Shown here: piece by piece, positions 24,299 through 38,501 of the stretch
Position numbering within the stretch: the first letter of the stretch is position 1
Layout of the letters: each line of letters opens with the position of its first letter
Sequence record: PP712906.1
Reading direction: 5' to 3' (one strand)
DNA: 64,000 nucleotides
The notes under the pieces: model-generated
What the model saw: the letters and a program-made list of their open reading frames with translations, nothing else
The model's database searches: none
What the model was told of the DNA's origin: nothing
Translations under genes and position numbers: made by a program

Positions 24299-25735
24299 TT
24301 AAAAGCTGTAGCGTTCAACGCCTACAGTTTTCAGCATGATCTTGACTGGCTCAAGCTCACCACCCAACAGTGAAGTCAGGATAGATGGGCTACAACCCGA
24401 TACCAGTGCAGTACCCGCTTCGCCAGCTTTAACCGGAACGTTGCCAAGACGACCACGAATGTTCCAGAAGACTAGTTGTGGCATTTCATAGCCAGCACGT
24501 GCGTACATAGCTTTGATTGCGTCGAAGTTTGCACGTTCGCCACGACCGTACCAGCCACCACCAGTATTTGCTTGGTCGAATTCCATGTCGCTCATGATAA
24601 GCAACTTAGTCGGCATTTCTTCTTGTGAAAGATTTGCACGTTTCGCACGTTCTAACAGAACGTTGAAGCACTTACCGATGTTTGTGCTCATGTCTTCGCC
24701 TGATCGGTTCATGTTGTCAAGACGCTCTTTTAGTGAGCTACCGCGTAACTGGTGGAAGTGCGGATCGCTTGAGAAGGAAATGAACTGATCTTTGAAGATG
24801 CCTTCATTGCGTTCAGCAACATAGATGCCAAGAGACATTGCAACTTGCTTACAAGTCACACCTGAACGATCTGCACCTGCGTTGATTGGCGTGCTCATAG
24901 AGCCAGACACGTCAACAACTGGGATGATGCGCTCATCAGAGCCTTCCATGTAGTTCGGCAGGGCTTTCCATTGCTCGTTCGCTACAGACGCATTACCATG
25001 ACTAACGCTCTTAACGACATCATATGGGAACAAGGCACCAGCGTTGATCTTCGCTTCACCTTTTTGAAGCGACTCGATGTAGCTTGTGTAACGAGCAGAA
25101 GCATTACGACCGAATGCTTGTTGATAACGAGCCGACGCTACAGATGGCAACTTACCGAAGTCGATTGTATCCCATTCTTGCGCACACATCTTCTGTTCAA
25201 CAGTGTCAGACAAAAGTGCTAGAATCTTACGCCACTGCTTCGCAGTTACGCCAAGAGACTTGATTGTGCGCTTGAACACATGACCGTTTTTGCTGTTCTC
25301 GCGTGGGAACCACTTCGCAGCGAGACTGTTCTTGTCGTTTACAATCGCATTTGTCCACAGCGTGATCGCGTCTTTTTCAAGACGTGTACCGAAAGCAGAA
25401 ATCAAGTCGTCGAAACGACCTAGTTCTGGAATTTTCGACATTACAGCACGAGCTACGTCAGGCTGCTCATTACAAAGCTTAGTGAATAGAGTACGGAAAG
25501 TACCACGTTCACCCGCACCACCGCGAACATCACGAGACCACAAAAGAATACGTGTCGCTAGTTCTGGGTTTTCTGCAAACGCACGACCGAACAGTGTTTT
25601 AGACTGATCGTTACCACGCATAGCAGCAATACCGAAGAACAAGTTTAGACACTCGTTACCTGAAGTGCTGTGAGTAACTGCACCGTTTGCTGTACGTGAA
25701 TCGTTAGTGGTCATTGCGTTCATAAATGCTGACAT
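24299..25735 (-). CDS. DUF2828 family TROVE-like/vWA protein
   Basis: T.NGA..HSTSG..CL.LF N-terminus, helical region with RD.RGGAGER, MIDAS VVDVSGSM, ISFSS, MSDMEFD. Confidence 0.85.
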   Translation of the reverse strand: MSAFMNAMTTNDSRTANGAVTHSTSGNECLNLFFGIAAMRGNDQSKTLFGRAFAENPELATRILLWSRDVRGGAGERGTFRTLFTKLCNEQPDVARAVMSKIPELGRFDDLISAFGTRLEKDAITLWTNAIVNDKNSLAAKWFPRENSKNGHVFKRTIKSLGVTAKQWRKILALLSDTVEQKMCAQEWDTIDFGKLPSVASARYQQAFGRNASARYTSYIESLQKGEAKINAGALFPYDVVKSVSHGNASVANEQWKALPNYMEGSDERIIPVVDVSGSMSTPINAGADRSGVTCKQVAMSLGIYVAERNEGIFKDQFISFSSDPHFHQLRGSSLKERLDNMNRSGEDMSTNIGKCFNVLLERAKRANLSQEEMPTKLLIMSDMEFDQANTGGGWYGRGERANFDAIKAMYARAGYEMPQLVFWNIRGRLGNVPVKAGEAGTALVSGCSPSILTSLLGGELEPVKIMLKTVGVERYSF

Positions 25736-25770
25736 TGTTTATTCCTCATATTAAATTGCTGTAAAATGTC
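25729..25770 (-). promoter_or_regulatory. 5'-leader CAGCAA-motif hairpin occluding RBS and AUG (copy A)
   Basis: GACAUUUUA-CAGCAA-UUUAAUAUGAGGAAUAAAC-AAUGUC; the 3' strand contains the start codon. Confidence 0.75.
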
Positions 25771-25784
25771 GTTTTGATGTGATG

Positions 25785-25813
25785 ATTATACACGGATTTG
25801 AACCTGTGTAAAC
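25785..25813 (-). promoter_or_regulatory. T4-type early promoter
   Basis: GTTTAC-17 nt-TATAAT with upstream A-tract. Confidence 0.8.
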
Positions 25814-25827
25814 ACTTTTTTCAATTT

Positions 25828-26142
25828 TTATCGAAAATTCATTCGAGTTAGATTCGTACCGTTTTCGTGAATCTCAACTAGCACGCGACCGCCCGTTTCA
25901 TAAGACGTTCGGAGAGAACGATAACCATGCTCTTCGAAGAATGTACGAATAATAGTCGCACCACGCTTGTCTTTATCAGCAGCGTGAATGGGCACTTTTA
26001 CGATGATAGGGAAACTAGACCCTGACTCAACTGCGTGCATGAATTCTTTCTCACATTCGCTCGTGTAATGCTCGATAAGAATTCGTTTTTCTTCTGCTTC
26101 ACGAGCGTGAATTTGTTGTTTGAGTTCATTATGATTAATCAT
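25828..26142 (-). CDS. hypothetical protein
   Basis: Coupled ORF; resembles its upstream neighbour (FPI.V.V). Confidence 0.7.
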   Translation of the reverse strand: MINHNELKQQIHAREAEEKRILIEHYTSECEKEFMHAVESGSSFPIIVKVPIHAADKDKRGATIIRTFFEEHGYRSLRTSYETGGRVLVEIHENGTNLTRMNFR

Positions 26143-26474
26143 TGAAACCCCGCTTGTTTGTTTTCTCGAATTGTCAATTTGACAAAAGAATATGAGTAAT
26201 CTCTCATATCACGCGGATCGCCAGAGTAATGTCCGAACTGTGCGTCGAAGTTATGAAAACCCTCGCGTCGCATGACGCCTTTGATGAGAGACATCATTTC
26301 ATCACAACATTCATTGCGGTCAACATTCACCTGAATCGTGATTGGAAACTGAAACCCAGCAACGCCACCGATTTTACGTTCGATTGCTTTGCGCATTTCA
26401 ACTACGAAGAGTTCTTCACGAGTTGAGCGATTCTGTTTGACTTTTTGAATTAATGTATCGTATAAATTACCCAT
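26139..26474 (-). CDS. hypothetical protein
   Basis: Start at MGNLY; coupled ORF. Confidence 0.7.
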   Translation of the reverse strand: MGNLYDTLIQKVKQNRSTREELFVVEMRKAIERKIGGVAGFQFPITIQVNVDRNECCDEMMSLIKGVMRREGFHNFDAQFGHYSGDPRDMRDYSYSFVKLTIRENKQAGFQ

Positions 26475-26841
26475 CAATATATTCCTTAATCGGCTTAGAA
26501 AAGTGACGAATACAAGAACTGTCAAGTCGTTTACGACCATCACCATCTATATCAGGTAGTGTGTATTCGTCATTAAACGGCTGACCGCTTTCTTTCGCAA
26601 TCTCATAGGCATCGGCTCGATTGAAGTATTCACCACAATAGTTGATAAACCCTTGACCGCGATCCCCGAGTTCGTTTCGATGTTCATATGTACAACCTAG
26701 TTCTTTCAATAACTTAAAGACTGATTGCATGTTTCGACCGAAATGGCAGCTATCAGCAACAACAATGTCGCGCACTTCACCGTTCGGTAGTGTTACTCGA
26801 ATTGCATTAGCAGCAGACGATATTACATTGACGTGCGACAT
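26467..26841 (-). CDS. conserved phage hypothetical protein
   Basis: QGF...G.YFNR.DAY.IA..SGQ pattern. Confidence 0.7.
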   Translation of the reverse strand: MSHVNVISSAANAIRVTLPNGEVRDIVVADSCHFGRNMQSVFKLLKELGCTYEHRNELGDRGQGFINYCGEYFNRADAYEIAKESGQPFNDEYTLPDIDGDGRKRLDSSCIRHFSKPIKEYIDG

Positions 26842-37210: not shown

Positions 37211-37223
37211 AAAACCTCGAAAA

Positions 37224-37877
37224 TTAAAACTTCATTTTTCGACCCTTGACCCACCCCAACTCAAGATAATCATCGAGTTCATCTTTAGGTATTTTCTTAC
37301 TACGTTTTTCAGTCAAAGAGTGTATCCAACAAGTACCGTACTGACTGTTCCCTGCGCCTCGTTGATGCTTAGAACTATTCTCTGATATTTTCCGCTTAGT
37401 TTCATCAGTGTGTTTCATACCTTTAAACGAACACATTGCAATATGGTCGTAAGCGCCAGATTCCCACAACGCAGTTGTTCTAGCAGAGTGTTCGGAATCC
37501 ACTCTAGCGAATAATTCAGGGTTTTCAACTCTAGAGCGTTTAGTTGCTTCAGCAGCATGTTTCTTCCATTCCAAAGAACGCTCATCTGAGTGGATATGTT
37601 CGAAGCTCCCATTCCCGCCTAGTGATATATTATATGTATCATTAGACTGTATGAACGATTCATCGACAATCACAGACTCCATATTATACATGTCGTCAGC
37701 ATTGTCAAAAATTGCTATATATTCTCTGGTAAAATTATCAACGCCGTACTTTTTAATAGCACGCTTGATCAGCTTACCAGAACCCATATAGTCATCTTCA
37801 AGATTTTCTGTCTTATGTACACCGACATATATTCTACCATTTATCAAGTTGGTAATCTTGTATACTGTATAAAACAT
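37224..37877 (-). mobile_element. GIY-YIG homing endonuclease (Seg-like) with NUMOD3
   Basis: VYKITNLINGRIYVG, YMGSG, HTDETKRKISE; TATAAATA at 37902-37909; T4 segB is likewise in the tRNA cluster. Confidence 0.9.
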
Positions 37878-38022
37878 ATTAACTCCTATCAATTATGATA
37901 GTATTTATAAGTTCGAGTCTTGAGTCTTGAACTAATTAACATTTCGTTACATATGCTTTCGGGATGCTTACGCAGGTTCTTCTCTACGTAAGCACAGATC
38001 CTCAATGTATATTTTGCCTTAG

Positions 38023-38211
38023 CTAATCACAACACAACCCAATATCGTGCGCTTTAATTACGGGATTGATGACCCGTTCGCATGTGATTAGCGTAAAAGT
38101 ATGATTACGCACCTTTTCTTCTTCAATGTCCAAGGCAAAGAGGACTATGAATACTAGTGCGAGAAGATATACAATCAAATTGCTCACCTCGCTTAATAAG
38201 TGAGAGTACAT
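38023..38211 (-). CDS. possible small membrane protein
   Basis: One TM segment; no clear RBS and the ATG lies in the stem flanking the tRNA-like RNA. Confidence 0.35.
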   Translation of the reverse strand: MYSHLLSEVSNLIVYLLALVFIVLFALDIEEEKVRNHTFTLITCERVINPVIKAHDIGLCCD

Positions 38212-38334
38212 TGGTCGAGTGTAACGGAATCGAACCGTTCCCACGATCTCCCTATGATATGCGTAAATTGGTTGCTGAATATAATCATGTCTGATTACAG
38301 TATGCTACGTGTGCTGCCACTACACCAACACTCG
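38212..38334 (-). ncRNA. tRNA chassis carrying a CAGCAA-motif hairpin in place of the anticodon arm (copy H)
   Basis: CGAGUGU/ACACUCG, D arm GUGU-AGUGGCA-GCAC, T arm AACGG-UUCGAUU-CCGUU, ACCA; interior AUGAUUAUAUU-CAGCAA...AUAUCAU; 21-bp flanking inverted repeat 38202-38348. Confidence 0.75.
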
Positions 38335-38349
38335 ACCAATGTACTCTCG

Positions 38350-38501
38350 ATATTTTAAATGTGCGCTACTTGCACGCCGACTGAGCGAATTTTAACTCAG
38401 CTAGTTTTTGATTGAGACCTCGTCCGCTAAGACTATTCCCTGCACGCCAGAACTTATACTGGCTCTATGTATTCATTGCGGCTAACGCACATTTAAAATA
38501 T
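38350..38501 (-). ncRNA. motif RNA (copy I, CCGCAA variant)
   Basis: 19-nt terminal stem AUAUUUUAAAUGUGCGUUA/UAGCGCACAUUUAAAAUAU followed by G-CCGCAA. Confidence 0.62.

What the first reader, a model, noticed from the sequence alone, without database searches (positions are those of the whole stretch)
24299..38501. Candidate phage Ro60/Y-RNA-like system: a repeated CAGCAA-motif RNA family and a TROVE-like DUF2828 protein
Seen in sequence: eight non-coding segments on the transcribed (-) strand of the tRNA array share one architecture. Their 5' and 3' ends pair in a 6-8 bp or longer helix, and C(A/U/C)GCAA follows 9 nt after the first paired G (11 in one copy). Most end in ...CUG or ...CAG. 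The helix sequences differ while pairing is kept: GACAUU/AAUGUC (28889-29136), GUGGCA/UGCCAC (29472-29531), GACAAU/AUUGUC (31166-31380), GAGUGUU/AACACUC (31990-32106), GUAAUCU/GGAUUAC (32518-32576), GCUUGC/GCAAGC (33187-33268), AUGAU(U)AU/AUAUCAU (38254-38288), GUGCG/CGCAC (38350-38501). Several start 5-11 nt after a tRNA CCA, so tRNA processing could release them. A ninth copy is in the leader of the DUF2828 gene. Established: Ro60/Rsr proteins are TROVE+vWA rings that bind the end-paired stem of Y RNAs and act in RNA quality control. Inference: DUF2828 is the cognate protein and these are its RNAs, acting as scaffolds, decoys or repair adaptors. The CAGCAA motif is not the canonical Ro60 GGUCCGA/UUGAC stem, so it may be an undescribed family.
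Basis: partly seen in the sequence, partly recalled or inferred. Interest (0 to 1): 0.95.

Follow-up and report, generated by a model that had tools for sequence, protein, structure and literature searches.

The report
Phage Ro60-like protein and partner RNAs
A KVP40-type Vibrio phage carries, among its tRNA genes, small RNAs with a fixed end-stem and a CAGCAA motif. In many unrelated phage lineages these RNAs sit beside a Ro60-shaped protein (DUF2828), so the pair is most likely an undescribed phage counterpart of the Ro60-Y RNA particle. The RNAs also closely resemble the unexplained Class I RNAs of social amoebae.

Summary
The window is a KVP40-like Vibrio phage. One copy is doubtful and the two near 38 kb are not supported. 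A strict pattern (G plus 6-bp end stem, C[AUC]GCAA at +9 to +11, matching 3' arm, U/A-G) hits 7 times on the minus strand and 0 times on the plus strand; 0.75 hits are expected.

The DUF2828/DUF7788 protein models as a full-length Ro60 fold: the top six PDB matches are all Ro60/TROVE, and a MIDAS DxSxS motif is present. It has no significant sequence match to TROVE.

In 83 other loci with a DUF2828 homolog the pattern occurs 154 times on the gene strand and 12 times on the opposite strand. Of 363 motif sites on the gene strand, 131 have their own exact complement, against about 7 when stems are swapped between sites; 61 different stems occur. A scan that starts from the RNA recovers the gene in at least 31 of 80 stretches.

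Many long copies carry a T arm-hairpin-D arm module like the tRNA mimic of bacterial YrlA Y RNAs.

The short copies match the architecture of Dictyostelium Class I RNAs (Rfam RF01414, 31.8 bits, below threshold). I found no paper that describes this RNA family.

Verdict: a real, probably cognate ribonucleoprotein and a new variant of the Ro60-Y RNA kind. Binding and function are untested.

The parts
24299..25735 (-). DUF2828/DUF7788 protein, 478 aa: a Ro60-like alpha-helical ring followed by a vWA domain with a MIDAS motif (DVSGSMS at about residues 275-281).
   Evidence: Pfam PF25043 at 1.2e-45 and PF11443 at 9.3e-30. AlphaFold model and Foldseek against PDB: the top six hits are all Ro60/TROVE. 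Invariant residues from the alignment. Homologs occur in 711 phage records.
25785..25812 (-). Sigma-70-like promoter of the DUF2828 gene (TTTACA-16-TATAAT). It is the best consensus match in the 15.5-kb region scanned.
   Evidence: 11 of 12 positions. This is a consensus match only.
25729..25771 (-). Leader copy of the RNA element: A-GACAUU-UUA-CAGCAA ... AAUGUC-AG. The Shine-Dalgarno sequence GAGGAA lies in the loop and the AUG lies in the 3' arm. It is a candidate operator for autoregulation.
   Evidence: Strict pattern hit. Covariance model R1 gives 18.9 bits, E 0.03. The copy is identical in KVP40. Sequence read.
28889..29136 (-). Long copy (247 nt), GACAUU/AAUGUC. It starts 12 nt after tRNA-Ser and is followed by a terminator-like hairpin.
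   Evidence: (kept in KVP40 and D480).
28854..28874 (-). Intrinsic-terminator-like hairpin at the end of the tRNA/RNA array.
29472..29531 (-). Doubtful copy (GUGGCA/UGCCAC, motif at +11). The hairpin is conserved but the CAGCAA motif is not.
   Evidence: no covariance-model hit.
31166..31380 (-). Long copy (214 nt), GACAAU/AUUGUC.
31990..32106 (-). Copy with a tRNA-mimic module (116 nt): GAGUGU/ACACUC, then a T arm AGGGUUCGAUUCCCU and a hairpin CAGUG/CACUG. It lies between tRNA-Gln (9 nt upstream) and tRNA-Thr (4 nt downstream).
   Evidence: The ortholog in D480 is at L085 6960-7071. No Rfam hit.
32518..32576 (-). Short copy (58 nt), GUAAUC/GAUUAC, lying between tRNA-Trp and tRNA-Asn. It is the copy closest to Dictyostelium Class I RNA.
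   Evidence: Rfam RF01414 at 31.8 bits, against a gathering score of 41.5. Model R1 gives 47.1 bits. A compensatory change is seen in KVP40.
33187..33268 (-). Copy (81 nt), GCUUGC/GCAAGC, motif CUGCAA, starting 6 nt after tRNA-Tyr.
29148..36840 (-). tRNA array: 28 ARAGORN tRNAs plus 2 further Rfam tRNA matches. The copies are interspersed within it.
38202..38348 (-). tRNA-like gene with a 20-bp extended acceptor stem. It does not have the family's architecture and its relation to the family is open.
   Evidence: ortholog in D480 at L085 1362-1484, where the outer stems covary; no model hit.

Best explanation
These RNAs are the partner RNAs of the DUF2828 protein. Together they form a phage ribonucleoprotein built on the Ro60-Y RNA plan, but with a different protein-binding module.

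Shown by computation:
- Constant part of each RNA. There is a terminal helix: an A(-1)-U pair, an invariant G1-C pair, and five freely covarying pairs. Next comes a single-stranded platform with U at position 8, W at 9, and CAGCAA at positions 10-15. The run before the 3' arm is A-rich, and the 3' end reads C-U-G(U).
- Variable part of each RNA. It can be a 25-45 nt A/U-rich loop (short copies, median 66 nt overall). It can be a YrlA-type permuted tRNA mimic (T arm, hairpin, D arm). It can be a 200-330 nt structured insert. In two cases it is a whole tRNA.
- The protein has the Ro60 ring-plus-vWA fold.

Inferred:
- The copies are transcribed within the tRNA array and released when the flanking tRNAs are processed by RNase P and 3' trimming. 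The spacers are only 4-12 nt long.
- The ring binds the constant stem-plus-CAGCAA module.
- The variable module tethers or decoys other factors such as tRNA-binding enzymes, exoribonucleases or host defence nucleases, or it gates the ring's cavity.
- The copy in the gene's own leader lets excess protein repress its own translation.

Likely biological role: RNA or tRNA surveillance, or counter-defence during infection. The Felixounavirus homolog, Bas63 gp130, was reported to counter the Ppl defence system.
For: Fold: (top six PDB hits are all Ro60/TROVE, aligned over the full length; the next hits are vWA domains only). MIDAS motif.

Window statistics.

Starting from the protein. In 83 loci with a homolog at 31-53% identity, the pattern occurs 154 times on the gene strand and 12 times on the opposite strand. 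It is present in 65 of 83 loci on the gene strand and 9 of 83 on the opposite strand. Copies often lie directly beside the gene: 15 end within 100 nt upstream of it and 14 start within 100 nt downstream.

Lineages covered: Straboviridae, Felixounavirus (4 copies just after the gene), Aeromonas phage Aeh1, a mycobacteriophage (3 tandem copies directly after the 'Ro-like RNA binding protein' gene), and many uncultured phages. Contigs of bacterial assemblies, mostly metagenome bins, give 43 hits on the gene strand against 2 on the opposite strand. A Clostridia-type clade carries a variant of the RNA, with 24 hits against 0.

Pairing is specific to each copy. Of 363 motif sites on the gene strand, 131 have their own exact complement. 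When stems are swapped between sites the mean is 7.1 and the maximum 14. There are 61 distinct stems. The -1 nucleotide covaries with the nucleotide that follows the C of the 3' arm (122 of 133 copies).

Starting from the RNA. The pattern gives at least 120 IMG/VR stretches, against about 3 expected by my own estimate. Twenty-five of the 80 fetched stretches contain the gene, and 6 more come from contigs already known to carry it.

The association is not simply with tRNAs: 19 loci have copies but no tRNA gene.

Y RNA likeness; compare Chen 2014.

Leader copy and promoter.

Functional hint: PhageMaP preprint 10.1101/2024.10.10.617714.
Against: - No data show that the RNAs accumulate or bind the protein.
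- There is no significant sequence similarity to TROVE or Ro60, so common ancestry rests on a model of moderate confidence with TM-scores of 0.45-0.58.
- The canonical Ro60 binding site is absent.
- 23 of 84 protein-first loci have no strict hit. Variant motifs and short contigs explain some of these.
- Only about a third of the RNA-first stretches contain the gene, although the stretches have a median length of only 9 kb.
- In Dictyostelium the look-alike Class I RNA is bound directly by an RRM protein, not by a known Ro60-like protein.
- The leader copy differs in register in D480.
Confidence: 0.75

Rival explanations
1. The elements are processing or spacer structures of polycistronic tRNA transcripts, for example RNase E, RNase III or RNase P guide hairpins. 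On this view they sit near DUF2828 only because both lie in tRNA regions.
For: In the window the copies lie 4-12 nt from tRNAs. Across loci, 32 of 80 copies start no more than 15 nt after a tRNA and 24 of 86 end no more than 15 nt before one. Most DUF2828 loci are rich in tRNAs.
Against: Nineteen loci have copies beside the gene but no tRNA gene at all. In mycobacteriophage Kingsolomon, three tandem copies directly follow the gene, and the locus's only annotated tRNA lies 2.7 kb upstream of them. One copy lies in the gene's own leader. A conserved single-stranded 9-nt motif and tRNA-mimic inserts are not expected of mere spacers.
Confidence: 0.08
2. The RNAs are substrates or clients rather than cofactors. 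DUF2828 would be a chaperone or quality-control ring that acts on array transcripts, or the copies would mainly be decoys that titrate the protein.
For: Ro60 also binds misfolded RNAs through its cavity (PDB 2i91, listed). Two copies clamp a whole tRNA. The leader copy suggests the protein binds this module as an operator.
Against: A constant module flanking highly diverse inserts is the modular layout of Y RNAs, which have a binding stem plus an effector module. Genes that stay tightly linked across very distant phages point to a dedicated partner RNA. The present data cannot separate a cofactor from a client.
Confidence: 0.12
3. The RNAs work without DUF2828, for instance as base-pairing small RNAs or as decoys for host proteins. 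They would be relatives of Dictyostelium Class I RNAs that are bound by other proteins, and their linkage to DUF2828 would reflect a shared early-gene or tRNA module.
For: In Dictyostelium the direct binder found is the RRM protein Rnp1A/CIBP. No Dictyostelium DUF2828 protein appeared among 115 long homologs.
Against: Strand-specific and often immediate adjacency to the gene persists across Straboviridae, Ounavirinae, mycobacteriophages and Clostridia-type contigs, with no other conserved protein neighbour. The RNA-first scan recovers the gene far above my rough base-rate estimate. One copy sits in the gene's leader.
Confidence: 0.04
4. The pattern is a chance or repeat artefact: low-complexity hairpins that happen to contain a common hexamer.
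For: CAGCAA alone is not enriched. A relaxed scan yields many chance hits.
Against: Simulations, strand asymmetry, the stem-swap control, and orthologous conservation with compensatory changes.
Confidence: 0.01

Closest known systems
Ro60/Rsr with Y RNAs. This covers bacterial YrlA and YrlB (Rfam RF02553) from Chen et al. 2014 (PMC4201824), and Thermus phage phiLo Ro60 with Yrl1 and Yrl2 (PMC12135203; PDB 9KOP, 9L5Y).
   Same: A ring-plus-vWA protein is encoded next to several small RNAs whose 5' and 3' ends pair. Where long copies were found, many carry a permuted tRNA mimic (T arm, hairpin, D arm), and the shorter copies lack it, as with YrlA and YrlB. The system is phage-encoded and often lies in tRNA-rich regions.
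   Different: The protein belongs to Pfam DUF2828/DUF7788, not TROVE, and resembles Ro60 only at fold level. The RNA's constant module is G-stem/U-W-CAGCAA/C-U-G, not the conserved GNCGAA-type Ro60 site. The outer parts of the Rfam YrlA model do not match. Copy numbers are higher, up to six or more per locus, and the copies are interleaved with tRNAs.
Class I RNAs of dictyostelid social amoebae (Rfam RF01414; Kjellin et al. 2021, PMC7919456).
   Same: Both have a 5' (A)AG, an invariant G1-C pair, and a 6-bp terminal stem that covaries. Both have U at nucleotide 8, then (U)ACAGCAA with the same invariant C..CAA, a variable A-rich interior, and a 3' CUGU. Lengths are about 60 nt and there are many paralogous copies per genome. 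Examples are DdR-21, GUUGACCUUACAGCAA...GUCAACUG, and D. lacteum dla_can_26, GAACUCUUACAGCAA...GAGUUCUG, which has exactly the phage spacing.
   Different: The phage copy scores 31.8 bits against a gathering score of 41.5, and nine other loci had no hit at threshold. In most Class I RNAs CAGCAA starts 1 nt further from G1. The eukaryotic DUSE promoter is absent. The phages also have long copies with inserts. The known Class I binder is an RRM protein. Class I RNAs were reported as unique to Dictyostelia.
Bas63 gp130 (Felixounavirus), from the PhageMaP preprint 10.1101/2024.10.10.617714.
   Same: By that description it belongs to the same Felixounavirus protein family (46% identity to the window protein in the related phage garuso). 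It lies directly upstream of the tRNA array, and the authors noted its structural similarity to Ro60 and guessed at Y RNA partners.
   Different: The authors proposed that some annotated tRNA genes might be the Y RNAs and identified no partner RNA. Here the candidate partners are the stem-CAGCAA RNAs that lie between the tRNAs. The anti-Ppl phenotype has not been tested for the Vibrio phage.

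Membership tests
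Pfam DUF2828 (PF11443) + DUF7788 (PF25043) | Significant match to both profile HMMs above their curated cut-offs. | tested here: met
   PF25043 at 155.9 bits (cut-off 27.1) and PF11443 at 104.2 bits (cut-off 29).
Ro60/TROVE proteins | Overall architecture: a HEAT-like alpha-helical ring followed by a vWA domain. | tested here: met
   the model has pLDDT 76. The top six PDB hits are Ro60/TROVE, aligned over 513-563 columns, with E-values 3e-8 to 4e-6 and TM-scores 0.45-0.58. Ring closure itself could not be inspected.
Ro60/TROVE proteins | Significant sequence match to the TROVE domain or to Ro60 sequences. | tested here: not met
   no TROVE hit even at E up to 10; the family profile against PDB sequences hits Ro60 only at the vWA region, with E 0.2-1.
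Ro60/TROVE proteins | MIDAS motif (DxSxS) in the vWA domain. | tested here: met
   D275, S277 and S279 are invariant (DVSGSMS).
Ro60/TROVE proteins | Binds Y RNA on the outer surface and single-stranded RNA in the cavity. | not testable with these tools
   Needs immunoprecipitation, gel-shift assays or a structure.
Y RNA / YrlA (Rfam RF02553) | The 5' and 3' ends pair in a stem, and the RNA is encoded next to the Ro60-type gene. | tested here: met
Y RNA / YrlA (Rfam RF02553) | A tRNA-like domain (T arm, acceptor-like hairpin, D arm) in at least one RNA per genome. | tested here: inconclusive
   Twenty of 48 long copies have the T-arm motif, and many of these are followed by a hairpin and a D-arm-like segment. 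L055 9877-9939 matches YrlA model positions 24-84 at 39.2 bits. The T arm covaries across 14 phages. The window's own copy (32105>31990) has a T arm and a hairpin but no convincing D arm and no Rfam hit. Six other loci gave no YrlA hit at E up to 0.05.
Y RNA / YrlA (Rfam RF02553) | The conserved Ro60-binding helix and motif, and a score at the Rfam gathering threshold (69 bits). | tested here: not met
   no hit at threshold, and the outer model positions 1-23 and 85-114 are unmatched. The CAGCAA module takes their place.
Dictyostelium Class I RNA (Rfam RF01414) | A 5' G and a 6-bp terminal stem conserved in structure but not in sequence. | tested here: met
   61 distinct stems; G1 in 100% of copies, which the pattern itself requires; A at -1 in 85%.
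Dictyostelium Class I RNA (Rfam RF01414) | The 11-nt motif CCUUACAGCAA adjacent to the 5' arm, with invariant U, C, C, A, A. | tested here: inconclusive
   CUUACAGCAA is identical in the window copy. Across the family U8 is present in 92% of copies; C10 and C13-A15 are present in all, but the pattern itself requires those. In most Class I RNAs the spacing from G1 is one nucleotide longer; some D. lacteum members share the phage spacing.
Dictyostelium Class I RNA (Rfam RF01414) | 3' end CUGU, with the C paired to G1. | tested here: met
   C 100%, U 86%, G 100%, U 49%. The C and G are required by the pattern.
Dictyostelium Class I RNA (Rfam RF01414) | Score at the Rfam gathering threshold (41.5 bits). 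| tested here: not met
   31.8 bits; no hit at threshold in nine further loci.
Dictyostelium Class I RNA (Rfam RF01414) | DUSE promoter element about 60 nt upstream. | tested here: not met
   TCCCAYAA occurs twice in the window, and neither occurrence is upstream of a copy.

The most novel reading that the evidence does not exclude
The phage stem-CAGCAA RNAs and the Class I RNAs of dictyostelid amoebae are one RNA family, or have converged on one protein-recognition module. Class I RNAs have been known since 2004, their molecular function is unknown, and they were reported as unique to Dictyostelia.

If so, Class I RNAs would be Y-RNA-like ligands of a Ro60-fold protein or of a functionally equivalent partner. 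The family may have moved between cellular hosts and viruses: DUF2828-fold proteins also occur in giant viruses of protists, in plants and in fungi. One of the four proteins pulled down with the Class I RNA DdR-21, DDB_G0281243, is of unknown function and should be checked first.
Probability: 0.3. Interest if true: 0.92.

Novelty: new variant of a known kind. Interest (0 to 1): 0.82.

Why it matters
DUF2828/DUF7788 is a very large family. There are 6,183 clusters at 50% identity with E up to 0.001 and 711 phage genome records. It also occurs in plants, fungi and giant viruses, and its RNA partner is unknown. One member was recently tied to escape from a bacterial defence system.

A defined RNA ligand family with a short constant module makes the system directly testable by gel shift, immunoprecipitation and cryo-EM. 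It would explain many unannotated gaps in phage tRNA arrays. It would also extend the Ro60-Y RNA principle, including tRNA mimicry, to a second and far more abundant protein family.

The resemblance to Dictyostelium Class I RNAs offers a concrete hypothesis for an unexplained class of eukaryotic non-coding RNA.

Tried and rejected
- Rfam at gathering thresholds finds only tRNAs in the window. YrlA and Y RNA models do not hit the window copies.
- The covariance model R1, built from short copies, cannot close copies with long inserts, so those were handled with an explicit pattern and controls.
- Sequence-level links to TROVE failed.
- I tried to learn whether Dictyostelium has a DUF2828 protein, or whether DDB_G0281243 is one. 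The Avesson 2011 paper is not held. The supplements do not mention it. Two searches restricted to long homologs showed plants, Mortierellaceae, Trichoderma, Daphnia and Chromera but no Dictyostelium. That result is not conclusive, because the search depends on shared words and on length limits.
- The abundant long non-coding RNA of phage K that lies next to a tRNA was checked as possible evidence of expression. It lacks the module.
- No protein neighbour other than DUF2828 is conserved with the RNAs. An RNaseH-like PF04308 gene occurs in only 4 of 83 loci.
- Literature searches for DUF2828, for Ro-like proteins in phages, and for Class I RNA together with Ro60 found no description of this RNA family.

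Full report
**What the window is.** The 64-kb window is 100% identical over 8 kb to Vibrio phage TCU-VP03-AIR1 and 96% identical to KVP40, which belongs to Schizotequatrovirus in the Straboviridae. On the minus strand it carries an array of 28 ARAGORN tRNAs at 29148-36840, plus two further Rfam tRNA matches. About 3 kb downstream of the array on that strand lies a 478-aa gene at 24299-25735. It matches Pfam DUF7788 (1.2e-45) and DUF2828 (9.3e-30). RefSeq calls the KVP40 ortholog 'RNA-binding protein'.

**Checking the observation.** The pattern requires:
- G plus five nucleotides;
- C[AUC]GCAA starting 9-11 nt after that G;
- the exact reverse complement of the 6-mer within 320 nt;
- then U/A-G.

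It hits 7 times on the minus strand and never on the plus strand. Simulated windows give 0.75 hits on average for both strands together, with a maximum of 4 in 300 runs.

The hits are 33267>33187, 32575>32518, 32105>31990, 31379>31166, 29135>28889, the offset-11 hairpin 29531>29472, and the leader copy 25770>25729. CAGCAA alone is not enriched, and a relaxed scan is noisy, so the signal lies in the composite.

KVP40 keeps the five array copies and the leader. One stem shows a compensatory change, GCAAUC/GAUUGC in place of GUAAUC/GAUUAC. Phage D480, whose protein is 82% identical, keeps four copies.

- The offset-11 hairpin keeps its stem in KVP40 but reads CCUGCAU where the window has CCAGCAA.
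- The copy at 38288-38254 lies inside a tRNA-like gene. Its 5' arm is not conserved in D480.
- The copy at 38490-38361 needs a G-U pair and lacks the CUG end. No counterpart was seen in the KVP40 and D480 stretches I read.

A covariance model built from short copies finds none of these three.

**The protein.** Homologs are extremely numerous. More than 7,000 proteins matched in the word-indexed search. There are 6,183 clusters at 50% identity and 711 phage genome records. These include Felixounavirus, Campylobacter, Listeria, Staphylococcus and Aeromonas phages, and mycobacteriophages where the gene is annotated 'Ro-like RNA binding protein'.

The alignment shows an invariant DxSxS MIDAS motif and an RDxRGGxGER motif. 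An AlphaFold model (pLDDT 76, pTM 0.73) has six Ro60/TROVE structures as its best PDB matches, aligned over the whole length. They are Thermus phage phiLo Ro60, D. radiodurans Rsr and Xenopus Ro60, with E-values 3e-8 to 4e-6 and TM-scores 0.45-0.58. Every later hit is a vWA domain alone.

At sequence level there is no significant TROVE or Ro60 match. The protein therefore has the Ro60 fold but does not meet the sequence definition of the TROVE family.

The likeness has been noticed before. A 2024 preprint reports that Bas63 gp130, a Felixounavirus protein lying directly upstream of the tRNA genes, resembles Ro60 and counters the Ppl defence system. It guesses that some annotated tRNAs may be Y RNAs. 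No RNA partner was identified there.

**Do the RNAs travel with the protein?** This was the key test.

*Protein first.* I fetched 80 IMG/VR loci with homologs of 42-53% identity, each with the gene on the plus strand and up to 10 kb of flank. I added loci from E. coli phage garuso, Aeromonas phage Aeh1 and mycobacteriophage Kingsolomon. The pattern, allowing at most one G-U pair, occurs 154 times on the gene strand and 12 times on the opposite strand in 1.43 Mb. It is present in 65 of 83 loci on the gene strand and 9 of 83 on the opposite strand.

Garuso has four copies, GAAGACC(AA/GU)..ACAGCAA...(UU/AC)GGUCUGG, in the array just after the gene. Kingsolomon has three tandem copies in the 380-nt gap just after the gene. 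Many uncultured phages have a copy within 100 nt of the gene's start or end.

*Control not biased by copy selection.* Of 363 gene-strand sites with only the 5' motif, 131 have their own exact 6-nt complement plus U/A-G downstream. When stems are swapped among sites the mean is 7.1 and the maximum 14. On the opposite strand 3 of 190 sites pair, against 1.9 expected. Sixty-one different stems occur.

*RNA first.* A pattern for one stem subfamily (AAAGGAU...UWCAGCAA...AUCCUG) finds at least 120 IMG/VR stretches. By my own estimate about 3 are expected by chance. Twenty-five of the 80 fetched stretches (median about 9 kb) contain a DUF2828 gene. Six more come from contigs already known to carry one. 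For comparison, only 1.4% of phage genome records carry the gene at all.

*Contigs of bacterial assemblies, mostly metagenome bins.* These give 43 hits on the gene strand and 2 on the opposite strand. A Clostridia-type clade that seemed to lack the RNA turned out to carry a variant. Its stem is shifted by one pair (AAG...CUUG) and CAGCAA lies one nucleotide closer. It gives 24 hits against 0.

*Not a tRNA association.* Nineteen loci have copies but no tRNA gene. No other protein neighbour is conserved.

**Anatomy of the family.** These figures come from 133 distinct copies.
- The median length is 66 nt, with a range of 32-332 nt.
- The consensus is A(-1, 85%) G1 (100%, required by the pattern) R R U N N N U8 (92%) W C A(86%) G C A A. 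An A-rich run precedes the 3' arm, and the end reads C-U(86%)-G-U.
- The -1 nucleotide pairs with the nucleotide after the C in 122 of 133 copies. It switches to U...A when the end is CAG, so the helix has 7 pairs.
- Short copies have an unstructured A/U-rich interior.
- Twenty of 48 long copies (90 nt or more) contain a T-arm motif GGUUCRANYCC, against 2 of 85 short copies. In many of these a hairpin and a D-arm-like GUAGCUCAGUUGGUAGAGC segment follow. That is the permuted order seen in YrlA.
- One long copy (L055 9877-9939) matches positions 24-84 of the Rfam YrlA model, which form the tRNA-like core, at 39.2 bits. It does not match the Ro60-binding ends of that model.
- An alignment of 14 long copies from different phages shows covariation in both the closing stem and the T arm.
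- Two copies enclose a complete tRNA.

The window's copy of this type is 32105>31990. It has a T arm AGGGUUCGAUUCCCU and a hairpin CAGUG/CACUG, and no Rfam hit. The layout parallels bacterial Rsr systems, in which at least one Y RNA per species mimics tRNA. That work covered only TROVE-annotated proteins (Chen 2014).

**The leader copy.** The best sigma-70-like promoter in the region scanned, TTTACA-16-TATAAT at 25812-25785, lies 15 nt upstream of the leader copy. The copy's loop holds the Shine-Dalgarno sequence and its 3' arm holds the AUG. A chance hit at that particular spot is improbable, by my own estimate about 6e-4. Many other phages place a copy immediately upstream of the gene's ribosome-binding site. 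Translational autoregulation is my inference. In D480 the motif lies at the start codon in a different register.

**Resemblance to Dictyostelium Class I RNA.** A permissive Rfam scan gave one unexpected match. Copy 32575>32518 aligns end to end with RF01414, 'Class I RNA from Dictyostelium', at 31.8 bits against a gathering score of 41.5.

According to Kjellin et al. 2021, Class I RNAs are 42-65 nt long. They start (AA)G and have a 6-bp terminal stem conserved in structure only. An 11-nt motif CCUUACAGCAA, with near-invariant U, C, C, A, A, adjoins the stem, and the RNAs end CUGU. The authors reported them as unique to Dictyostelia, and they accepted candidates with a model score of 25 or more plus a stem.

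Sequences from that paper's supplement are nearly interchangeable with phage copies. Examples are DdR-21, GUUGACCUUACAGCAA...GUCAACUG, and dla_can_26, GAACUCUUACAGCAA...GAGUUCUG.

The differences are these:
- a one-nucleotide spacing shift in most members;
- no DUSE promoter near the phage copies;
- no phage copy at the Rfam threshold;
- the direct protein partner found in Dictyostelium is an RRM protein. Another pulled-down protein, DDB_G0281243, is of unknown function.

I could not establish whether dictyostelids have a DUF2828 protein. The fold does occur in plants, fungi, Daphnia, Chromera and giant viruses of protists. I treat homology with Class I RNAs as the most novel reading the evidence does not exclude, not as a finding.

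What is known:
- the Ro60-Y RNA principle;
- phage Ro60 homologs with Yrl RNAs;
- the Ro60-like fold of this protein family.

What appears new:
- the RNA family itself;
- its near-universal linkage to DUF2828;
- its modular forms;
- the leader copy;
- the Class I resemblance.

No searchable paper describes the RNA family. Expression, binding and function remain untested.

Noticed in passing
window 38202-38348 (-): A tRNA-like gene with a D arm, a T arm and a 20-bp extended acceptor stem (GAGAGUACAUUGGUCGAGUG/CACUCGACCAAUGUACUCUC). Neither ARAGORN nor Rfam calls it at threshold. Its long insert carries a conserved UAUUCAGCAACC. The ortholog in phage D480 (L085 1362-1484) has covarying outer stems. 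It may be a second way of presenting the CAGCAA motif.
   Followed up: partly
window 35558-35670 (-); L001 19685-19931; L085 1498-1617: tRNA genes with insertions of about 40 nt in the anticodon region. The window's copy scores 49.8 bits against the Rfam tRNA model, and KVP40 annotates its versions as pseudo-tRNAs. The KVP40 and D480 versions share a conserved UUCAUGCUGCAAAC inside the insert.
   Followed up: partly
window 23724-24254 (-): An RNaseH-like (PF04308) gene directly downstream of the DUF2828 gene. Homologs lie inside the tRNA arrays of 4 of 83 other DUF2828 loci (L053, L081, L082, L084).
   Followed up: partly
L230-L286 (Clostridia/Lachnospiraceae-type contigs), e.g. L254 7284-7917: This clade carries a variant of the RNA. 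The stem is shifted outward by one pair (AAGNNNN...NNNNCUUG) and CAGCAA lies one nucleotide closer. Up to four copies lie directly upstream of the gene. There are 24 hits on the gene strand and none on the opposite strand.
   Followed up: partly
L084 5188-5293; L081 9783-9878: Two copies whose stem-CAGCAA module encloses a complete, high-scoring tRNA (Arg and Asn).
   Followed up: partly
L014, L017, L025, L032, L045; L076, L078, L082-L084; window 28889-29135 and 31166-31379: Long copies (100-330 nt) fall into subfamilies with conserved 3' segments shared across unrelated contigs. Examples are AUUGUCCCUUACAYCACUCUG, AACUCGCCAAAAS, AAAAAGUAGACAAC and GAUAGUCAAYU. What their interiors do is unknown, and no Rfam family matches them.
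   Followed up: no
window 32980-33165 (-): A 61-aa ORF with a good ribosome-binding site immediately after copy 33267>33187. It starts MKALFALVLAVSLSACSS, a lipoprotein-type signal with a lipobox, and sits in the middle of the tRNA array.
   Followed up: no
window 33346-33738 (-) and 37224-37892 (-): HNH and GIY-YIG homing-endonuclease-like genes lie inside the tRNA array. The HNH protein has homologs in the arrays of Felixounavirus loci (L002, L074). D480 has a homing endonuclease inserted just upstream of its DUF2828 gene.
   Followed up: partly
L015 8605-9054; L055 15708-15934: A full-length tmRNA (75 bits) and a group I intron (71.5 bits) lie in the neighbourhood of DUF2828 genes of uncultured phages.
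   Followed up: no
Kjellin et al. 2021, supplementary file 56: The outgroup table of that paper lists an Arabidopsis candidate (ath_can_1, model score 40) with the layout GUUUUC-AUUA-CAGCAA...GAAAAC-UG. Plants have several DUF2828 paralogs. In a genome of that size the hit could be chance.
   Followed up: no
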